In this document: positions 6,401 through 54,873 of the stretch, one piece after another
Layout of the letters: each line of letters starts with the position of its first letter
Position numbering within the stretch: the first letter of the stretch is position 1
Assembly (NCBI RefSeq): GCF_032062105.1
Contig: NW_026933486.1
Span: forward strand, 124,001 to 188,000
DNA: 64,000 nt
Direction: 5' to 3'
Source of the DNA: Saccostrea cucullata
Taxonomy: Eukaryota
The notes under the pieces: model-generated
What the model saw: the letters and a program-made list of their open reading frames with translations, nothing else
Databases searched by the model: none
What the model was told of the DNA's origin: nothing
Translations under genes and position numbers: made by a program

Positions 6401-8512
6401 CAACAAGACATTGGGAGCAGGGTTAAACCAAGGAAACTGTAAAACATTAACAAGACAGCAATAACAATAAATGATGCTCAGTGGTGGATCCAAAAATCTT
6501 GAAAAGGGGGGCCCAACCACTCTTGGGTCAGGGTAGGGGTCCACCGCCACACCATAAAAAACATTAATTTATCAAATCTTGTGTATATTTTCTTAATCCG
6601 CGAGTAGTTCTGATAGAGCAACCTTGGATAGGAATAGCTCCAAATGATGCTTCAATAGAGCAACTCTTGGAGATTTGGAGATTAAGTAATACCATTCATG
6701 GGGGCTAATTGAATGTGTAACAAAATGTCTTAATTAGAGCATTACTTTATCTAATAAAGTCTTTCAGTCTAAAAATTTCTTTTGGCTCTACTAATGTAGT
6801 AAATTTTGCTTCTCATTCATCAAAGAGCTCTCTCTATTTCTTTCTAGTATCAATATAAAGTTATTATGAACAGCTAGATTGACAAGAAATAAGTTTTTAT
6901 CATTTTCGAACCCTAGGGTGCTCCCCTCCCACTTCCCCTGCACCAAACTCCACCCCTCAAATAAAGAAGACCCCTTCACTAAATGTGACCTCATTTCTAT
7001 AATTTTCTAATCTTTATCCAAACTCCCGTATTTGTTTAATAAACAGGGAAATGGTAACACAATAACACTCCATCTGAATCAACAGACCCAGGATACAAGA
7101 ATAATTACCCCCCAATCCCTCCACAAACCCCTCACGTCAAAAATCCGCATCAGCAGAATCTTATATCTAAAATAATGTTTGTTTTTCAGCCTAAAATTAG
7201 TCTCGTTAAAACGTTAACAATTTGTGAGAATAACGAGGCCCCATTTACTCCATTACTGTGATGGGGATGGATGAGGAATACGAGGGAGATGGACAGGAAC
7301 TGACCGAGTCCAGAGGAAGGGCCGAGAATCGGGTCAAGTCTGAAATAATTGGTTCCAAATGCTCCAATCAGAGACTTGTAGACCGAACCTGGAAATATGT
7401 TCAGTGACTGTTTATGACACAAGAAATCTGCAATTTCCTTTCCATATGTAGTCCAGCAATTGATTTTCCATCTTCTACCATAATAACCTTAAAACCTTTC
7501 CTCAAGTCCTATTATCCGATGAACAAGTTGATTCCAGTCGATTTTTACAGGAAATGGACATACTGATGATGGGAATTTTCTCTGTGTGTGTAAGCCAATT
7601 AGGAACAAGAAAATGCGGACAAGAAATGTTTATCACCCGGCTTATAGCATCTTATTGCCACCACAAGCAGATTCAGTCCAATTTACCAATCTTTTCATTA
7701 ATAAGAAAACCAAGAGGATTTCCCCTGGAAGACTCCGGTCAGAAGACTGATTCACTGTCACGTTTATACAATGACTAACACTCAGTTACTGCAAAGGATA
7801 GTTCTGGTCACTAACAGGTGTTAAAAATTAAATTCAAGTTTTCAATATGCAAAATATTTGACATTTTTACAAAAGCTAAGTGTGTGAATGTGTGCTGGGA
7901 GGGGGTGTCCAAATTTAATATGTACAATTTTCTCTTTTGTTTCAAAAAAACCTCAGACAAAAATAAAACCCAAGAACATATAGATTTTGAGGCATCAGCT
8001 TAGCTTACAAACCTAGGATTTCATTTTTACAAGACTAATTAGTAAAGGGAACCTTATTAGTCATTTCCAGATGAAGACTGAGACATTCCTGATAGATCAA
8101 TTTCATCTGTTGTCCATTATAAAAATGGCCATCTAACTTATAGCTCTATATCCCCCATCCATCACTGCCCAGACAAACCCAGAACCACATCAGTTTTCTG
8201 AAGAACACTTCCTTTCTTTGTCAAACACATCAATAGAAAAACAAGACAGATGGACCCTAACAAAGATTTTGATACACACAGAATCCAGTTTTGCATAAGG
8301 CAGACTTTAAGATAATGGAGGTCATTTCCCCTTATTCACAAAGCACATTGGCTTATAAACATAAAATCCAAATTGATTCTTTTTGACATTCAATGAAGTC
8401 ATCAAGTGAATTTCTGCCAATGAAGTTATCTATATGATCCTACAAGAGGTTGTTCCCCCTTTTAATTTAACATATAGGAGTTAGCTCCCTTCAATAAAAA
8501 ATGTTAACTTAC

Positions 8513-8788
8513 CAACAACGATTAGTGTATAGTTAACACTGATGCTGCCGAATCCGTTGGTCGCTTTACAGACGTATCTCCCAGCATTCTCTACTTCTAT
8601 CTGTTTAATCCGTAAAGACCCGTCCTTTAGCACTTTATGATTTTCCCATAATTCATTTATACTTTCACCGTCTTTCTTCCATTCTATAAATGGAAACGGA
8701 TCTCCTTCCACTTGACACAGTAATTTTTTCGTATGATTCACTTTCGCTATTTGTCTCCCTTTGCCGTCACCGACATATTTTGGAGGAC
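8513..8788 (-). CDS. FGFRL1: FGFRL1 Ig-like domain 1 exon
   Basis: 276 nt, phase 1-1, acceptor ttttgatttttccAG and donor GTAAGT. Translation GPPKY...LLCQVEGDPFPFIEWKKDG...AGRYVCKATNGFGSISVNYTLIVV matches FGFRL1 Ig1 as I recall it (CPVEGDPPP..W.KDG ... YVCKATNGFGSLSVNYTL). Confidence 0.93.
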
Positions 8789-11700
8789 CTGGAAAAATCA
8801 AAACAAAACATTTATAATCGAGATATTAGTCATAATACGCAGCATACCATGTCTTCTATAATGTCTACCTCAAGGCTTTATAAATGGCAGAAACTGGGTC
8901 AAACAGAATTAATAATTCTTGTACCATAAACCAAATCATTAGTGAAGAACAGGACAACTGACTTTCCTGTGATTATAAATCTGTGTTTTTGTATTGATTA
9001 TAAAATATTTCTTCTCTTACTCACAAAAAAAGTCAACTTATTCATTTATGTAATGTCTGTTACATACGTAAACTCAAGGAAAGCTGATAATCTGATTGAG
9101 AAATGACAACAAAATAATTAGCCAGGCAGAAAAAGACCTAGCAGAAGAGGCCTATCATAGAGATGTCATGTGATACTTGATGACAATGTACATAAGCTTT
9201 TCTATCAATACGAGGACCAGGTCTTGTTCATTTTTGGGGGATGTTTTACAGAAGGTTAATGGTTTGAGTTACAACATTTCCCCATGTTTTTGTTATTGGA
9301 CAATAGCAGGTGCCCCTTATTCAATCTCTAACAGACACCAGTCTTCATTTCTGTTTAATACCACACAACACATGTACACCTCCATTGTACTTTTATCAAT
9401 TTAAAACTTTTTTTGTTACATTTTTTGCTCCGATACCGTAACACAGGCTATCTCTCTCATCAGTGTGCACACGTCTTACTCTAATTCTTTTCATTTTTAC
9501 TCTCGAATTCCCAAGTTTTAGGATTTGGAGCCAAACCAGGCTTCGACGGTGTTAGTTTTTTGTATATGCTGGAGCCTTAAGTGGCCAGAAATGCCGATAA
9601 TGTGTAAATAGCCAATTATCCTTTTCAAAAACTAAAATTAAAAAGTTGTGTAACATGATGGAGCATGTGCTATCTGAGAATTACAACACTTGAGAAGCTG
9701 CTAGTCCTTGTCAGGTGGTGTAATGGAAACATCCCTCCCGCTTCATAAAGCGCCGCTCACAAATCATAATTCTCACCAATAAATCCGAGGGGGATGGCAA
9801 ATGCAGTTTTAATGTATCAAAAGTTTAACAGGTTTAAGTGCAGGCAGCAGGCATGGAATGCTAGCCTGGCTTCCAAGGAAAACAGATTTCCTTCACCCAT
9901 GTCACGTCCCTGCCAAAGATAAAATGGTCGACCTTGTCAAGTATAATGGATCTGTCAAATGAAAAGCTTTAACATTCTAATACACAAAACCAATCAGTGA
10001 CTGAAGTCATCCACTCTAAATGGGCCCTGTTCTGCAATTCATTGCTGCTGTTTTAATATTCAAACCTTTAGAAAGCTATTTACTGCTGATAGCTAATAGA
10101 GAATATTTCTAATTTATTCAAGGGTTTAATAGAGTTGCAGTGATTATCGGCCTGCCAATATTGCATGTTCTCAGCATGTAGACCTTTCTGGCATTTATAC
10201 ACAGCCTTAGCACCAGCTGTTCTGGGGGACCAGTCATTATTCCGGCTATGTTACCAGCTGTTCAGGGGACCAGTTGTTATTTTGGCTATGTTGCCAGGGC
10301 TGTCAGGGAAACTACTCCAATCAGTTTTAAGAATTTCTTGTAACTATTAAGATCTTAATGCAGTGGTAATGATTATAATGGGTAACTTGTGTTTTAGTTT
10401 TAATGGGGACAAGTCGCGGAATAAGGCTGGGAAGGCGGAAGATTTTTACATTGTCTGATGGAGAGAGGAGGGGAGGATATTCCAGGGAATTACGTTCATA
10501 CAACTAATGGTGTCTCAACAATTGTCTGAGTTTAGTTTTGAAAAGCATAAATGCATTTCAATTAATGCCTTCTTTATTGCTGATTTACAACTGAATGACG
10601 GAAATATCTAATTTATGATAAAATGTGATGGACAACAAAAAGAATTTTAAAAAATTTTTGAAAAAAAATATTTTAAAAAGGTAAATCTTCAATTGTTAAG
10701 ATACGTAAAGCTTAGATAAAGAAGAAAAATAGGGAAGAAAACAGTTATCATTCAATAATTTAATGATTTCAGAAAACTTCCTGCCTCACACAGAACAAGG
10801 AGGAAAAAAAATCACTTAGGATATCAAAGATGGCAGAACTTGATACCTTACTCAGAGCAGTTATTGTTTGGAGTTTCTAGACTTGAGCTAATGGCTCCTA
10901 AATGATATTTAGTAATTAATACCACACATCTCCCCACTTCATACAGATAGCCCCCCCATCAAAGTAAATCTGGGCTGTTATTATTTGATTGGGGGACCCC
11001 TCACCAGCGCTTTCTCTGCTGATAAAGATGCCTCCTATACTGTTAACAGAGCAGTGCTTTCTATGATAAAAAGATGTACAGATTCTTCCACTAAGTTTTC
11101 ATATAAATTGCTTTCTAATAGTAAATATGTGTAACTACTGTTTGGGATGTGAGCATGGTTTCTCCAGAATTTTGATAAGATTTTATGGTTACACAGCGCT
11201 GTTTCTGGGGGGAACGTGATATTGCTGCCTTACATGACCAGCGGCCATTACGGACTTGAGTCATTTACTAATTGGGGTCCAGTGACTGGTCAATGAGTGG
11301 TCACCGTGAGTAATTAACCCTTATAAGCCTCCAATATTTCCTCTGTTTAATTAATCCCCTGGTCTCAGATTCCCTTCCCTGATGTACTAGCTGCCAGGAA
11401 TTATGTCAATATACTTTTCTCAGTAGTTTTATGAACCAGCAAGAATTAAAAACCTATCTTTCCTTTAACATACTAATGCTGACTAGTAAATTCTTCCATG
11501 TGAAAAACCCTTTTCAATTGTAAAATGATACCTTTGGAGAATGATAATATTTTGCAGCTGCATTTATATACTACTATTAGATTATAAAAATTGCAGATTT
11601 ATTTTTTCCTGCACATTAATTTTACTGTAAACAGTGTCACATTTTAAGATTCCTATCTTGGTGTAGCGATACATGTCTGTTCCCATAATTCCCTGGTGTC

Positions 11701-13742: not shown

Positions 13743-14200
13743 ATGCAAGCTAGATTTAGAACAGCAAACCATAAATTACCCATTGAAACAGGAAGATGGG
13801 AAGGTATTGAAAGAATTAATAGAATATGTCTTTTATGTAAAAATGATCTTGGTGATGAATTCCACTATATTTTATGTTGTGAAAAATTAAAAGATGAAAG
13901 AAAATTGTACATTCCGAAATATTATTTTACAAGACCAAATATTATCAAATTTAATGAATTGTTTTCTTCAAAAAATGTTGGACTATTGAGTAAACTCTGT
14001 TCTTTTATTAAAATTTTAAACGAGAGAGTCAAACCTCCAGGTTAACATCAGTGTAAACATATATGGAAATACTTGATTATAAGCACACTTTGTATATCAT
14101 ATATATGCTCACGCATGTATGTATATATGTTATGATAATATGTATTGATCTCTGTGTTGTTAAATAACAACCAAAGAGATGTTAATAAACTGGTAAACTG
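13743..14200 (+). mobile_element. 3' end of a non-LTR retrotransposon (RTE-X-like) in an FGFRL1 intron, antisense to the gene
   Basis: ORF2 C-terminus RFRTANHKLPIETGRW...RICLLC...GDEFHYILCC...RPNIIKF with a CCHC-type knuckle, followed by a 3' UTR ending AATAAACTGGTAAACTGG. Confidence 0.8.
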
Positions 14201-50953: not shown

Positions 50954-53689
50954 ATGGCGGATAGTTTGTTGCCAACCTGTGGAAACGAAACTGAGGAAGA
51001 TTGTGAAGAGAATTTACTTGAGATTGAGAGAGACTCAGATGAGATGGAAGATTTCTTTCAATACATTCTTGATAACAACGTAGAGGGAATTAAACTGAAA
51101 CTGGAAGATGGGTACAATGCTTTGTCGGTGAGTGTACATGGTGATATGGCTCTTCATTTTGCAGCTTTGAACAGTAAAGTGGACGTGTTACGTGTTTTTG
51201 AAAATCAGTTGCGGAACAAGTCAGCAATAAACACTGTGCATGTTAAAGATATTGACGAATGTGGCACGGCTCTTCACACAGCTATGGACGGCCAAGTGTC
51301 TGTGGAAACTGTGCTATTTCTCGTAGAATGGGGTGCTGATGTTAACGCAAAGGATATCCGTGGAGGATCCGTTCTCCATGAATTGATAGACATGGCATGG
51401 ACGGATTTCGAAGAAGACTTTGATAGGGAGAAATACCTAGCATCAAATCCCCAGGACGGACAGAGTTATCTGACAAAATTATCCATTCTTCATCAGCATG
51501 GAGCAGACATGAATGCAAATCATGAGTTGACAAGTCTTACCCCACTTCAAAAATGGTGCCAGCAATCCTTTTGGTGCACAGAAAAATGTGAACATACGGG
51601 ATGTATTCCAGACTGGTGTTTCATGTTCTTAAACAAAATGCTTGAATATGGATGCGATGGGAAATCTGTGAATGATCGAGGAGAGAACCATCTGTATTAT
51701 TTCGCACAGAGGCGCTACAAAGAGACAGACCATCGCTTTATGGTAGATTATGGGAGAATGTGTGAACTTCTAGTTAAGTGTTGTGATCTTAAGCAGAAAA
51801 ATATCAACGACCACACCATTCTTCATGCTGCAGCAGAATTTTCAAATGTCGTGATCATAAGAGAACTTCTCAAACATGACATAGACGTAAATGTGAGGGA
51901 TAAATTTGGACTAACAGCGGTTCATCTAATCACACACAATATAACAGACGATGAGAAAGGGTTGGTGACGGGAATTCTTGACTTGCTTCTTCAACATAAT
52001 GGTGATATAAACGCTACCGACAATCATGGATCTACGCCAATTCACCATGCAATAAGCATGCAGAACTCTACGGCAGTCTCTTATCTTATTCAACATGGTG
52101 CTAATCTGAAGCTGAGAGATAACAATGGACTTGACGCATTAGAACTAGCAGCTATAACTGGTAAAAGTGAAATACAGAAACACTTAGGAATATTATACCA
52201 AAGGTCCCAGCCGGAAGTTGTTCCTGGGGTCACCGACTTTGATACTGGTTATTACTACCCTCGGTGTTGTCGGTGGACCGGAAGCGAAACCTCATTCAAC
52301 GAACAGGCGGACATTATCAAGAATCACAAATTCTTGTCTTATCTGAAAAGCTTTTGTTTTTGTCCACATAATACAAAGTTCATTATTCAAAACTGTCTGC
52401 CGTTTTATGACAAAAAACAAAAACACTATTTCATGAAAGATTTCAATAAACTTCAAGAGGAATTGATGGATGTTATGGAAAGAGTTGTTACCGCAATGAA
52501 TACCGAAAATAAATTATTTCATTGTGATTTCATTCTTGGGGGCAGTAACGCTGAAGGGACAAAAGTAGGGGCCCCTGATGAATTTGACTTTTTGTTTATT
52601 TTGAAGACCTTAAGCAAAGTTCTTGTACCCGAAGAAAATGAAGAATTCCGAGGATTTGTCAAACTGAAAGTTAAAGATGGAGACCCTATTGCGTTAAATC
52701 CATCAATTACGAATGAAAATGGATACGTCAAAAGAGAAGCATTGAGTTGCCATTTTCATAAGCTGCTAGAAAAGGTGCTTCGAAGGAAGGAAATATTTGA
52801 AAACACATGTTTTGAATCCCACAATGGAACGGTAAATGCTGAAGGTGAATGTTGGGACATAGGACAACTAAATCTGAAGTGGTATGGTCCATTTAGAAAG
52901 AGGCAAATGGTCAAAATTGATATTGTACCAGTATTGCAGATACCTAATTGGCGATCAATGTTCTTAAACAAAAATATTAGCATTATAGATTCACAAACGA
53001 TGCAGTCCGTAGAATGTTTTCTTGTAATGAAAGATGTCAGACGGGAAATATCCAACCTTACTTCAGCAGATATTGAGGACAATGATTTAATTGAAACGGA
53101 GAATCAATTATTTCAAATATCATTTTCTCAGTTAGAACATGCAGTTATCTTTCAATTGCCAGAGGAAGTGAGAGATGGTTTGAAAGTCGCGAAGACAATA
53201 CTTCTGCAAAGTCCAAGGATAGCCTGTGAACGGGTAGAGTTTAACGAACACGGAATCTGTGACCAGGTTTTACAAACAGCAGACGGATCGCTATTTGTGA
53301 CCAATGTCCATCACTATTTGACCAGCTATAAGATCAAAACAGCTTTACTTCACGTGTTGGATGATTTGAAACATAGGATAACTCTTTCTAAAGAAGATTT
53401 GCAGCCAGCTTGCTGGAATAAAGTAGTGACGGATGCAAACACACTTGAACCAAGAGAGAGCAACCTGTGTGAAGCTTTAAAGTGGACAAAAAGAATCTAC
53501 GAAAAACTTCACCATCTTGCAAAACGCAAGGGACACGTTCCGGATTATTTTTTATCTCGTCAGAAAATGACAGGAAACAGTGTTACTGCTCAAAACGAAT
53601 CCAGTGTATTGGCGGAGTATTGTGAGGTCATGTTACGACTGACTGAAAAATTCAAAGTACCCGATCACATCACCTCATTTACTGATTAA
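50954..53689 (+). CDS. Ankyrin-repeat + Mab-21/cGAS-like nucleotidyltransferase (cGLR-type protein), 911 aa, uninterrupted CDS
   Basis: ANK motifs GDMALHFAA, GTALHTAM...GADVNAKD, HTILHAAA...DVNVRDKFGLTAVH, GSTPIHHAI...GANLKLRDNNGLDALELA (aa ~60-410). NTase motif LGGSNAEGTKVGAPDEFDFLF (S531, E543, D545), third acidic residue in KIDIVPVL (D656), FQISFSQLE, LTSYKIKTALLH and VPDYFL correspond to cGAS/Mab-21 motifs. Confidence 0.93.
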   Translation: MADSLLPTCGNETEEDCEENLLEIERDSDEMEDFFQYILDNNVEGIKLKLEDGYNALSVSVHGDMALHFAALNSKVDVLRVFENQLRNKSAINTVHVKDIDECGTALHTAMDGQVSVETVLFLVEWGADVNAKDIRGGSVLHELIDMAWTDFEEDFDREKYLASNPQDGQSYLTKLSILHQHGADMNANHELTSLTPLQKWCQQSFWCTEKCEHTGCIPDWCFMFLNKMLEYGCDGKSVNDRGENHLYYFAQRRYKETDHRFMVDYGRMCELLVKCCDLKQKNINDHTILHAAAEFSNVVIIRELLKHDIDVNVRDKFGLTAVHLITHNITDDEKGLVTGILDLLLQHNGDINATDNHGSTPIHHAISMQNSTAVSYLIQHGANLKLRDNNGLDALELAAITGKSEIQKHLGILYQRSQPEVVPGVTDFDTGYYYPRCCRWTGSETSFNEQADIIKNHKFLSYLKSFCFCPHNTKFIIQNCLPFYDKKQKHYFMKDFNKLQEELMDVMERVVTAMNTENKLFHCDFILGGSNAEGTKVGAPDEFDFLFILKTLSKVLVPEENEEFRGFVKLKVKDGDPIALNPSITNENGYVKREALSCHFHKLLEKVLRRKEIFENTCFESHNGTVNAEGECWDIGQLNLKWYGPFRKRQMVKIDIVPVLQIPNWRSMFLNKNISIIDSQTMQSVECFLVMKDVRREISNLTSADIEDNDLIETENQLFQISFSQLEHAVIFQLPEEVRDGLKVAKTILLQSPRIACERVEFNEHGICDQVLQTADGSLFVTNVHHYLTSYKIKTALLHVLDDLKHRITLSKEDLQPACWNKVVTDANTLEPRESNLCEALKWTKRIYEKLHHLAKRKGHVPDYFLSRQKMTGNSVTAQNESSVLAEYCEVMLRLTEKFKVPDHITSFTD

Positions 53690-53819: not shown

Positions 53820-54440
53820 CAACGATCAGTATTAATCTCAGAAGTACATTAATCAACACAAATTTTTGAGCAGAGCATACAAGGACCTCTAAAACACTGT
53901 TAATTAAAGTCCAGGCTTCTTGATACCAATGACAGCTGGGGTTTTTTTTCAATACAAATGAAACTCATTAATTTACTTACCTTGTCATTTGTCATTTGCA
54001 AATATATTTTATCAAAGACCATTTTTATTGTACACAAGTACTCTGAAGTTGATATTAAAAAGGTGCTTGAGTTTCTGATTGACAATATTTATGCGGTCTT
54101 TGGAGACCAGTTCTTCCGACAGTCTGTTGAAATTTCCATGGGTACGGTCGCACCCTTTGATTATTATTGTCAGCAAGACATCTATCATTAAGTCAAATGC
54201 CGACTTACGTTATTTTATACCAATTGTTCAATTATTCATTATTCACATACTTAACCATCTACGATTTTTCCCGATCATATCAAGGAGCACACGTGGGTGT
54301 GACGGTCGACAGGGGATGCTTACTCCTCCATAAAACCTGATCCCACCTTTGATATTTTAGGTCCATGTTTCCTCTGCTCAAAATTTGCATTGCTTCAATG
54401 GATCTTGAGATTGAATGCTAGTAAGTATTTCCATATTTCT
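53820..54440 (+). mobile_element. Penelope-like fragments just downstream of the ANK-cGLR stop codon
   Basis: Short inverted 3' piece (53820-53900), then HKYSEVDIKKVLEFLIDNIYAVFGDQFFRQSV and the 3' module at ~54270-54380. Confidence 0.82.
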
Positions 54441-54873
54441 TTGAGTACAACAGTGAGATATTTTGAAAAACGATGGGATGAACATAGCCATTGTTACAAT
54501 GTATTTGAAACATTTTGATTGTACACACATGTACTCTGAAGTTGATATTTAAAATGATGCTTGAGTTTCTGATTCACAATATTTATGTGGTTTTTGGAGA
54601 CCAGGTTTTCAACAATCCATTGAAATCACCATGTGTACCTATTGCGCCCCGTTATGAGCAGATCTATTTTTGTATTCATATGAAACGGAAATAGTTCAAA
54701 ATCTTATAGGTATGCAAGAGCATGCTCTACATGAGAAAAATTTCTAAAACGAGGTAAAGTATTGACAAACAAATTGATGAAACAAGGATATCATCAGTCT
54801 CGTTGAAAGTCATCATTTCGTAAGCTCTATGGTCGATACAATAACCCTCTCAGCAAATGCAATATATCATTAA

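What the first reader, a model, noticed from the sequence alone, without database searches (positions are those of the whole stretch)
50954..53689. Ankyrin-fused cGAS-like receptor with an intact catalytic triad: candidate invertebrate nucleotide second-messenger immune sensor
Seen: roughly 7-9 ankyrin repeats (aa ~60-410) fused to a Mab-21/cGAS fold with G-S531, E543-F-D545, D656 (KIDIVP), SFSQLE and SYKIKTALLH. Known: cGLRs use hG[GS]x9-13[DE]h[DE]h plus a third acidic residue to make cyclic dinucleotides that activate STING, and the family is expanded in bivalves and cnidarians. The segment after SFSQLE (HAVIFQLPEEVRDG) lacks the H/C zinc-ribbon that vertebrate cGAS uses for dsDNA. Inference: ligand recognition or auto-inhibition may have moved to the ankyrin array, making this a protein-sensing rather than nucleic-acid-sensing cGLR. 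Alternatively the repeats could bind a nucleotide signal, as RNase L ankyrins bind 2-5A made by the related OAS enzymes. I cannot tell whether this exact architecture has been characterised.
Basis: partly seen in the sequence, partly recalled or inferred. Interest (0 to 1): 0.85.

Follow-up and report, generated by a model that had tools for sequence, protein, structure and literature searches.

The report
Oyster ankyrin-fused cGAS-like receptor
This is an intact oyster gene for an immune-type signalling enzyme related to human cGAS with an ankyrin-repeat arm attached; the design is already catalogued in many invertebrates but I found no test of its trigger or product, and this copy belongs to an old, conserved branch whose nearest named non-oyster relative is, oddly, in a feather star.

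Summary
Observation confirmed. One 911-codon frame encodes about nine ankyrin repeats and a cGAS-fold domain (model pLDDT 90; Z 26.7 to mouse cGAS) with G530-S531, E543, D545, D656 and the triphosphate-binding lysines intact. The genome is Saccostrea cucullata. The S. echinata orthologue is syntenic, 84% identical, dN/dS 0.15. The architecture is not new: Li et al. 2023 catalogue ANK-cGLRs, including a member of this subfamily (KAH3721497.1); this genome has at least seven more, and the scan noted such paralogues in other windows. The missing zinc ribbon proves nothing, as nucleic-acid-activated invertebrate cGLRs lack it too. Better support for a non-nucleic-acid trigger is the acidic enzyme domain (pI 6.1; known sensors exceed 8.5) and a conserved ankyrin binding face. 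Two things I did not find described: an invariant CC-x30-C-x-H linker motif (candidate zinc site), and a crinoid gene closer to the oyster gene than any named bivalve copy is (100/100; AU p 0.0004). Old transfer, hidden paralogy and contamination are not resolved. Verdict: new member of a known kind.

The parts
50954..53689 (+). ANK-cGLR coding sequence, 911 aa, one open frame (no intron in the CDS)
   Evidence: the S. echinata orthologue is annotated with the same length and a contiguous CDS
50954..51049 (+). Acidic, disordered N-terminal tail (aa 1-32; 13 D/E, 1 K/R)
   Evidence: acidic in most subfamily members, sequence not conserved (dN/dS about 1)
51050..52189 (+). Ankyrin array, cap plus nine repeats (aa 33-412); repeats 3-5 have insertions with conserved W149, W201, R242, R253
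   Evidence: dN/dS 0.14
52265..52369 (+). Linker motif C438-C439-x30-C470-x-H472, candidate zinc site specific to this subfamily
   Evidence: present in all 12 members whose gene model covers it; a loose pattern for it matches only 2 of about 140 other relatives; model confidence low here; metal binding is inferred
52412..53653 (+). cGAS/Mab-21 nucleotidyltransferase domain (aa 487-900): spine helix, NTase lobe, helical C-lobe; pI about 6.1
52541..52546 (+). G530-S531 activation-loop motif
   Evidence: invariant in 45 relatives
52580..52588 (+). E543-F-D545, first two catalytic acids
52919..52921 (+). D656, third catalytic acid
   Evidence: invariant in 45 relatives; the profile places this strand on the cGAS third-acid strand
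53114..53137 (+). Q721-I-S-F-S-Q-L-E728; Q721 stands where 35 of 45 relatives and cGAS have Arg
53192..53194 (+). K747, likely triphosphate-binding lysine
   Evidence: at least 90% conserved in 45 relatives; role inferred from knowledge of cGAS
53324..53338 (+). S791-Y-K-I-K795 motif (cGAS SYHVK)

Best explanation
A working oyster ANK-cGLR: a cytosolic, metal-dependent nucleotidyltransferase that makes a cyclic dinucleotide (or related nucleotide) signal, most likely read by one of the oyster's STING proteins, and that is switched on by something other than long dsDNA or dsRNA. Shown: intact frame, cGAS fold, complete active site, purifying selection, STING genes in the genome, acidic enzyme domain, conserved concave ankyrin face, conserved Cys/His linker. 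Inferred: the ankyrin array, tied to the spine helix by the (probably zinc-binding) linker, holds the enzyme off and releases it when a conserved protein or small-molecule cue binds; because the binding face is conserved, not diversifying, the cue is more likely a fixed partner (the enzyme's own domain, a guarded host protein or an invariant microbial molecule) than a fast-changing pathogen protein. Product identity is unknown; Q721 in place of the usual Arg hints it need not be 2'3'-cGAMP.
For: Fold. Active site; triad intact in 44 of 45 relatives. Selection: dN/dS 0.15 overall, 0.085 in the NTase lobe, 0.14 in the ankyrins. STING matches on at least 8 contigs. pI 6.1 with 6 basic and 7 acidic residues on the spine helix, against above 8.5 for nucleic-acid sensors (PMC9980059); 141 related NTase regions have median pI 5.5 and only 7 exceed 8.5. 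Concave-face positions 0.66 conserved against 0.45 for outer-helix positions, p 0.003; only 3 of 54 face positions differ between the two oysters. Linker motif.
Against: No activity, ligand or expression data. Only 15 of 140 cGLRs screened made the active model panel, so an intact triad does not guarantee cyclic-dinucleotide synthesis. Shrimp Mab21 proteins act without nucleic-acid binding or cGAMP (PMC12928593). The model does not fix the ankyrin-enzyme contact (linker pLDDT below 50, pTM 0.73, 10 sequences). pI is a coarse proxy and my regions are not cut exactly as in the paper. Several relatives are frameshifted in their assemblies. A concave face is normally more conserved than outer helices in ankyrin proteins, so that contrast is weak evidence.
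Confidence: 0.55

Rival explanations
1. An ordinary nucleic-acid-sensing cGLR; the ankyrins only localise it or recruit partners.
For: dsDNA and dsRNA are the only known cGLR ligands, and oyster dsDNA sensors exist; they lack the zinc ribbon too. The new Cys/His motif lies just before the spine helix and could help bind nucleic acid; the linker is mildly basic (pI 8.6).
Against: Enzyme-domain pI 4.9-6.6 in most full-length members, 7.7 at most, and no basic excess on the spine helix, unlike all known sensors.
Confidence: 0.12
2. The ankyrins bind a nucleotide signal (as RNase L ankyrins bind 2-5A), making the protein a relay or amplifier of another cGLR's product.
For: The modified repeats 3-5 hold invariant W149, K175, W201, R242, R253, the residue types that stack bases and bind phosphates. 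The genome has at least 150 Mab-21 matches that could supply signals.
Against: RNase L is not among the top 60 sequence or the listed fold matches of the ankyrin part; the array is acidic overall (pI 5.4); no pocket was modelled.
Confidence: 0.13
3. The protein works mainly as a scaffold or makes no STING ligand (Mab21L1-like or shrimp Mab21-like), possibly in development or housekeeping.
For: Shrimp Mab21 proteins act by binding IKK-epsilon without making cGAMP. Slow evolution and one copy of this branch per oyster genome are unusual for an arms-race gene.
Against: GS, three acids, K537, K747, Y792 and K795 are kept across the subfamily and the class, which argues for catalysis.
Confidence: 0.17
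4. A silent or decaying gene copy.
For: No transcript evidence was obtained; retro-element fragments lie on both sides; some relatives are broken.
Against: Full 911-codon frame in two species at dS 0.55 with dN/dS 0.15 and no indel.
Confidence: 0.03

Closest known systems
ANK-cGLRs of Li et al. 2023 (PMC9980059; Fig 1C, S2, Table S2), notably Dreissena KAH3721497.1
   Same: Same architecture (N-terminal ankyrins, C-terminal cGLR domain with triad). KAH3721497.1 is in the same subfamily (34% identity, clade 100/100).
   Different: Listed only as domain hits. The five ANK-cGLR accessions I checked are not in the biochemical screen table (not exhaustive). The Cys/His linker motif and the crinoid link are not mentioned in what I read.
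Cv-cGLR1 (oyster, PDB 8GJW) and Sp-cGLR1 (coral, PDB 8GJY)
   Same: Best PDB matches of the class profile (E 1e-27, 4e-27); same fold (Z 25.0 for 8GJW); no zinc ribbon.
   Different: No ankyrin array in the matched chains; the characterised nucleic-acid sensors are basic (pI above 8.5), this domain is acidic; about 18% identity.
Acidic auto-active cGLRs such as Pd-cGLR (pI 5.0)
   Same: Acidic enzyme domain, proposed non-nucleic-acid ligand.
   Different: No ankyrin array in the screened construct; relationship to this clade not tested.
Vertebrate cGAS
   Same: Fold (Z 26.7, rmsd 3.2 A, 316 residues) and catalytic residues.
   Different: No zinc ribbon, no basic DNA-binding spine, Q in place of the guanine-binding Arg, 110-residue spacer before the third acid, ankyrin array in place of the basic N-terminal tail.
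RNase L
   Same: About nine N-terminal ankyrin repeats in front of an enzyme of nucleotide-signal immunity (own knowledge).
   Different: No kinase or KEN domain; no specific sequence or fold match beyond generic ankyrins.

Membership tests
cGLR (Li et al. 2023 definition) | Predicted structural homology to cGAS | tested here: met
   AF2 pLDDT 90, pTM 0.90; Foldseek E 7e-14; Z 26.7 over 316 residues
cGLR (Li et al. 2023 definition) | G[S/G] activation-loop motif | tested here: met
   G530-S531, invariant in 45 relatives; preceded by Gly as in Tc-cGLR 7LT2
cGLR (Li et al. 2023 definition) | [E/D]h[E/D] plus a third acid (catalytic triad) | tested here: met
   E543, D545, D656. Spacer is 110, outside the written 50-90, but it is class-wide (106-116) and the authors' own list holds a subfamily member.
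cGLR (Li et al. 2023 definition) | Pfam Mab-21 above curated cut-off | tested here: met
   50 bits against 24.1. Mab-21_C not hit, but the C-lobe is covered by the fold match (model 11-419)
cGLR (functional) | Synthesis of a cyclic dinucleotide | not testable with these tools
   needs biochemistry
ANK-cGLR architecture class | Ankyrin repeats and cGLR domain in one chain | tested here: met
   one open frame; same fusion in orthologues
Nucleic-acid-sensing cGLRs | Basic enzyme domain (pI above 8.5) with a long positive ligand surface | tested here: not met
   pI 6.1; spine helix 6 K/R against 7 D/E; electrostatic surface not computed
Vertebrate cGAS | H-C-C-C zinc ribbon after the SFS motif | tested here: not met
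   no insertion and no Cys/His cluster at aa 729-747
RNase L | Pseudokinase and KEN ribonuclease domains after the ankyrins | tested here: not met
   only Ank and Mab-21 families hit
RNase L | 2-5A-binding residues in ankyrin repeats 2-4 | not tested
   no residue-level comparison made; RNase L not among the top matches

The most novel reading that the evidence does not exclude
This branch is an ancient, slowly evolving ANK-cGLR with its own zinc-binding linker that makes a nucleotide signal only when its ankyrins meet a conserved non-nucleic-acid cue, and it passed long ago by horizontal transfer between an oyster-line bivalve and a crinoid, i.e. an immune receptor moved between animal phyla.
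Probability: 0.12. Interest if true: 0.75.

Novelty: new member of a known kind. Interest (0 to 1): 0.36.

Why it matters
No non-nucleic-acid activator of an animal cGLR is known from the papers I could read, and I found no functional study of any ANK-cGLR. This gene is a good test case: intact, one coding exon, single copy of its branch, conserved across bivalves, with an acidic enzyme domain and clear residues to mutate (triad, CC-CxH linker, W149/W201/R242/R253). If the crinoid placement is real transfer, it would be a case of an innate-immune enzyme crossing between phyla. The architecture alone is ordinary.

Tried and rejected
Architecture is new: rejected (seven paralogues in this genome; 95 of 99 long hits have an ankyrin match). 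Missing zinc ribbon as evidence of protein sensing: rejected. Pseudogene: rejected. Recent transfer between oyster and crinoid: rejected, synonymous sites are saturated (pS 0.82). Viral carrier: no relative in viral contigs. Gene inside an intact mobile element: no transposase ORF; flanks are collinear with S. echinata. Crinoid scaffold as Saccostrea contaminant: its 3' flank matches this genome almost only in a simple repeat; another contaminating animal is not excluded. A test of the scaffold's origin through a LINE fragment gave nothing at the strict cut-off I chose. Hosts of the ENA contigs could not be identified. Synteny across bivalves: no shared neighbour within 10 kb. Full-length fold searches returned only generic ankyrins. 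The first large IQ-TREE run timed out and was replaced by FastTree and smaller careful trees.

Full report
Observation. The window is AT-rich animal DNA (GC 30-37%) with one long ORF, 50954-53689 (+), 911 aa. Pfam finds ankyrin repeats (Ank_2 E 2e-27) and the Mab-21 nucleotidyltransferase domain (aa 534-731, E 5e-13), but not Mab-21_C. An AlphaFold model of the whole chain shows a cap and nine ankyrin helix pairs (aa 33-412), a low-confidence linker (aa 414-485) and a two-lobed enzyme domain. The enzyme domain, modelled with 45 relatives, is confident (pLDDT 90) and matches cGAS and Cv-cGLR1 best (Z 26.7, rmsd 3.2 A, 316 residues). G530, S531 and D656 are invariant, and E534, K537, E543, D545, S723, E728, K747, Y792 and K795 at least 90% conserved, in those 45 sequences.

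Organism and family context. A paralogue from this genome is identical to XP_062568582.1 of Saccostrea cucullata, on a contig of the same length, so the window is from that rock oyster. The genome has at least 150 Mab-21 matches, seven more long open frames with ankyrins plus Mab-21 at 22-27% identity, and STING-domain matches on at least eight contigs. The S. echinata orthologue is 84% identical, the same length, and has collinear upstream DNA. dS is 0.55 and dN/dS 0.15 overall, 0.14 in the ankyrins and 0.085 in the NTase lobe. The gene is under purifying selection.

What is known. Li et al. 2023 (PMC9980059) state that 87% of cGLRs are single-domain and that some carry ankyrin or TPR modules; ANK is a class in their Fig 1C and S2, and Table S2 lists dozens of ANK-cGLRs. 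The list includes Dreissena KAH3721497.1, which falls in the same subfamily as this gene. The five listed ANK-cGLR accessions I checked occur only in the domain table, not in the biochemical screen, and my searches found no functional study of an ANK-cGLR; the library lacks most subscription papers. Other readers in this scan noted ankyrin-fused paralogues elsewhere in this genome; the lengths fit copies I found myself.

The zinc-ribbon argument. The ribbon is absent, but it is also absent from Cv-cGLR1 and Sp-cGLR1, while oyster and coral cGLRs respond to dsDNA and dsRNA. It says only that this is not vertebrate cGAS. Charge is a better guide: nucleic-acid-sensing cGLRs have pI above 8.5, and acidic ones are thought to respond to other ligands. 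This domain has pI 6.1 and no basic excess on its spine helix; full-length subfamily members range 4.9-7.7; 141 related NTase regions have a median of 5.5 (regions cut differently from the paper's).

The subfamily. An exhaustive profile search gave a sharp group of about a dozen strong hits above a broad background of ANK-cGLRs. Named members come from Saccostrea, Tegillarca, Potamilus, Dreissena, Mya and the crinoid Anneissia japonica; others sit on unnamed animal-like contigs in metagenome assemblies. No Crassostrea, Ostrea, Mytilus or scallop member was named, but the word-based searches miss relatives below about 40% identity and most background hits were not identified. All 12 members whose model covers it share C438, C439, C470 and H472 in the linker; a loose pattern for this matches only two other relatives. 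This is a candidate zinc site, unrelated in position to the cGAS ribbon; metal binding is inferred. In the ankyrins, concave-face positions are more conserved than outer-helix positions (0.66 against 0.45, p 0.003), and the inserted repeats 3-5 keep W149, K175, W201, R242 and R253. That fits a fixed partner better than an arms race, though such a contrast is common in ankyrin proteins.

The crinoid oddity. Anneissia XP_033116531.1 is 58% identical in the ankyrins and 48% in the NTase lobe; the named non-oyster bivalves reach 37-47% and 35-42%. It groups with the two oysters and one unnamed contig at 100/100. Holding the six named bivalve sequences together is rejected (AU p 0.0004; three unnamed ingroup rows were left out, and the group was named after I had seen a first tree). 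The oyster-crinoid path (0.95) is shorter than that between Dreissena and Mya (1.04), two clams of one order (order and ages from my own knowledge). Synonymous sites are saturated, so any transfer is old. The crinoid copy has a one-base frameshift near codon 747, with the rest of the C-lobe in another frame. Its scaffold is 165 kb, carries an intron-containing mitochondrial-carrier gene, and its 3' flank has no oyster-like DNA beyond a simple repeat and one weak 114-base match. My odds: hidden paralogy with slow rates and many losses 45%, old transfer 35%, contaminant scaffold 20%. The root inside the subfamily is unresolved, so no direction can be given. This concerns the family's history more than the oyster gene.

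Mechanism. Shown: frame, fold, active-site residues, selection, STING genes, acidity, conserved ankyrin face and linker. Inferred: a metal-dependent cyclic-dinucleotide synthase held off by its ankyrin array and released by a conserved non-nucleic-acid cue, signalling through STING (0.55). Rivals: scaffold or non-STING role as in shrimp Mab21 proteins (PMC12928593; 0.17), nucleotide-binding relay (0.13), nucleic-acid sensor (0.12), dead gene (0.03).

Limits. 

Verdict. A real, intact, new member of a catalogued but apparently untested class, with two side observations worth following. Interest 0.36.

Noticed in passing
L001:10001-12758 (Anneissia japonica scaffold VUNX01052830.1): Crinoid copy is the nearest named non-oyster relative (65% DNA identity over 956 bases of the ankyrin part); one-base frameshift near codon 747, so the annotated 765-aa protein lacks the C-lobe that follows in another frame.
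   Followed up: partly
window 44200-44560 and 44675-44684: Non-coding block highly conserved with S. echinata (far above the 77% of the whole 750-base match, no other copy found in the genome), 6.4 kb upstream, with a conserved kappa-B-like site GGAAATTTTC beside it. May be a first exon or promoter; which gene owns it is unknown.
   Followed up: partly
window 8481-8801 (-): Exon-sized frame with an immunoglobulin I-set domain (E 5e-17); looks like an FGFR/FGFRL1-type ectodomain (from memory, untested).
   Followed up: no
window 49326-49787 (-), about 54000-54600, 61236-61655 (+), 13743-14045 (+): Fragments that look like retro-element (Penelope- or LINE-like) coding and repeat DNA around the gene; no Pfam hit for the three frames scanned.
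   Followed up: partly
L011, L012 (G000:C13106:125500-143000): Tandem array of three intact ANK-cGLR paralogues (899, 894, 932 aa); two have a long insert inside the C-lobe.
   Followed up: partly
L025:2232-12997 (Mya arenaria) and L018:3125-11836: The subfamily is tandemly duplicated in Mya (two 998-aa copies) and on an unnamed animal contig next to an amiloride-sensitive channel gene.
   Followed up: no
L026:10001-12720 (Tegillarca granosa): The ark-shell copy is spread over three frames with a stop in the linker; the annotated 560-aa model skips parts of it. Pseudogene or assembly error.
   Followed up: partly
P0013, P0014 (Mercenaria, Ruditapes): Proteins of about 2,270 aa with ankyrins and two cGLR-like stretches.
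   Followed up: no
ESM Atlas hits: Several clusters join ankyrin repeats to an MTPAP-like nucleotidyltransferase, a parallel ankyrin-NTase fusion.
   Followed up: no
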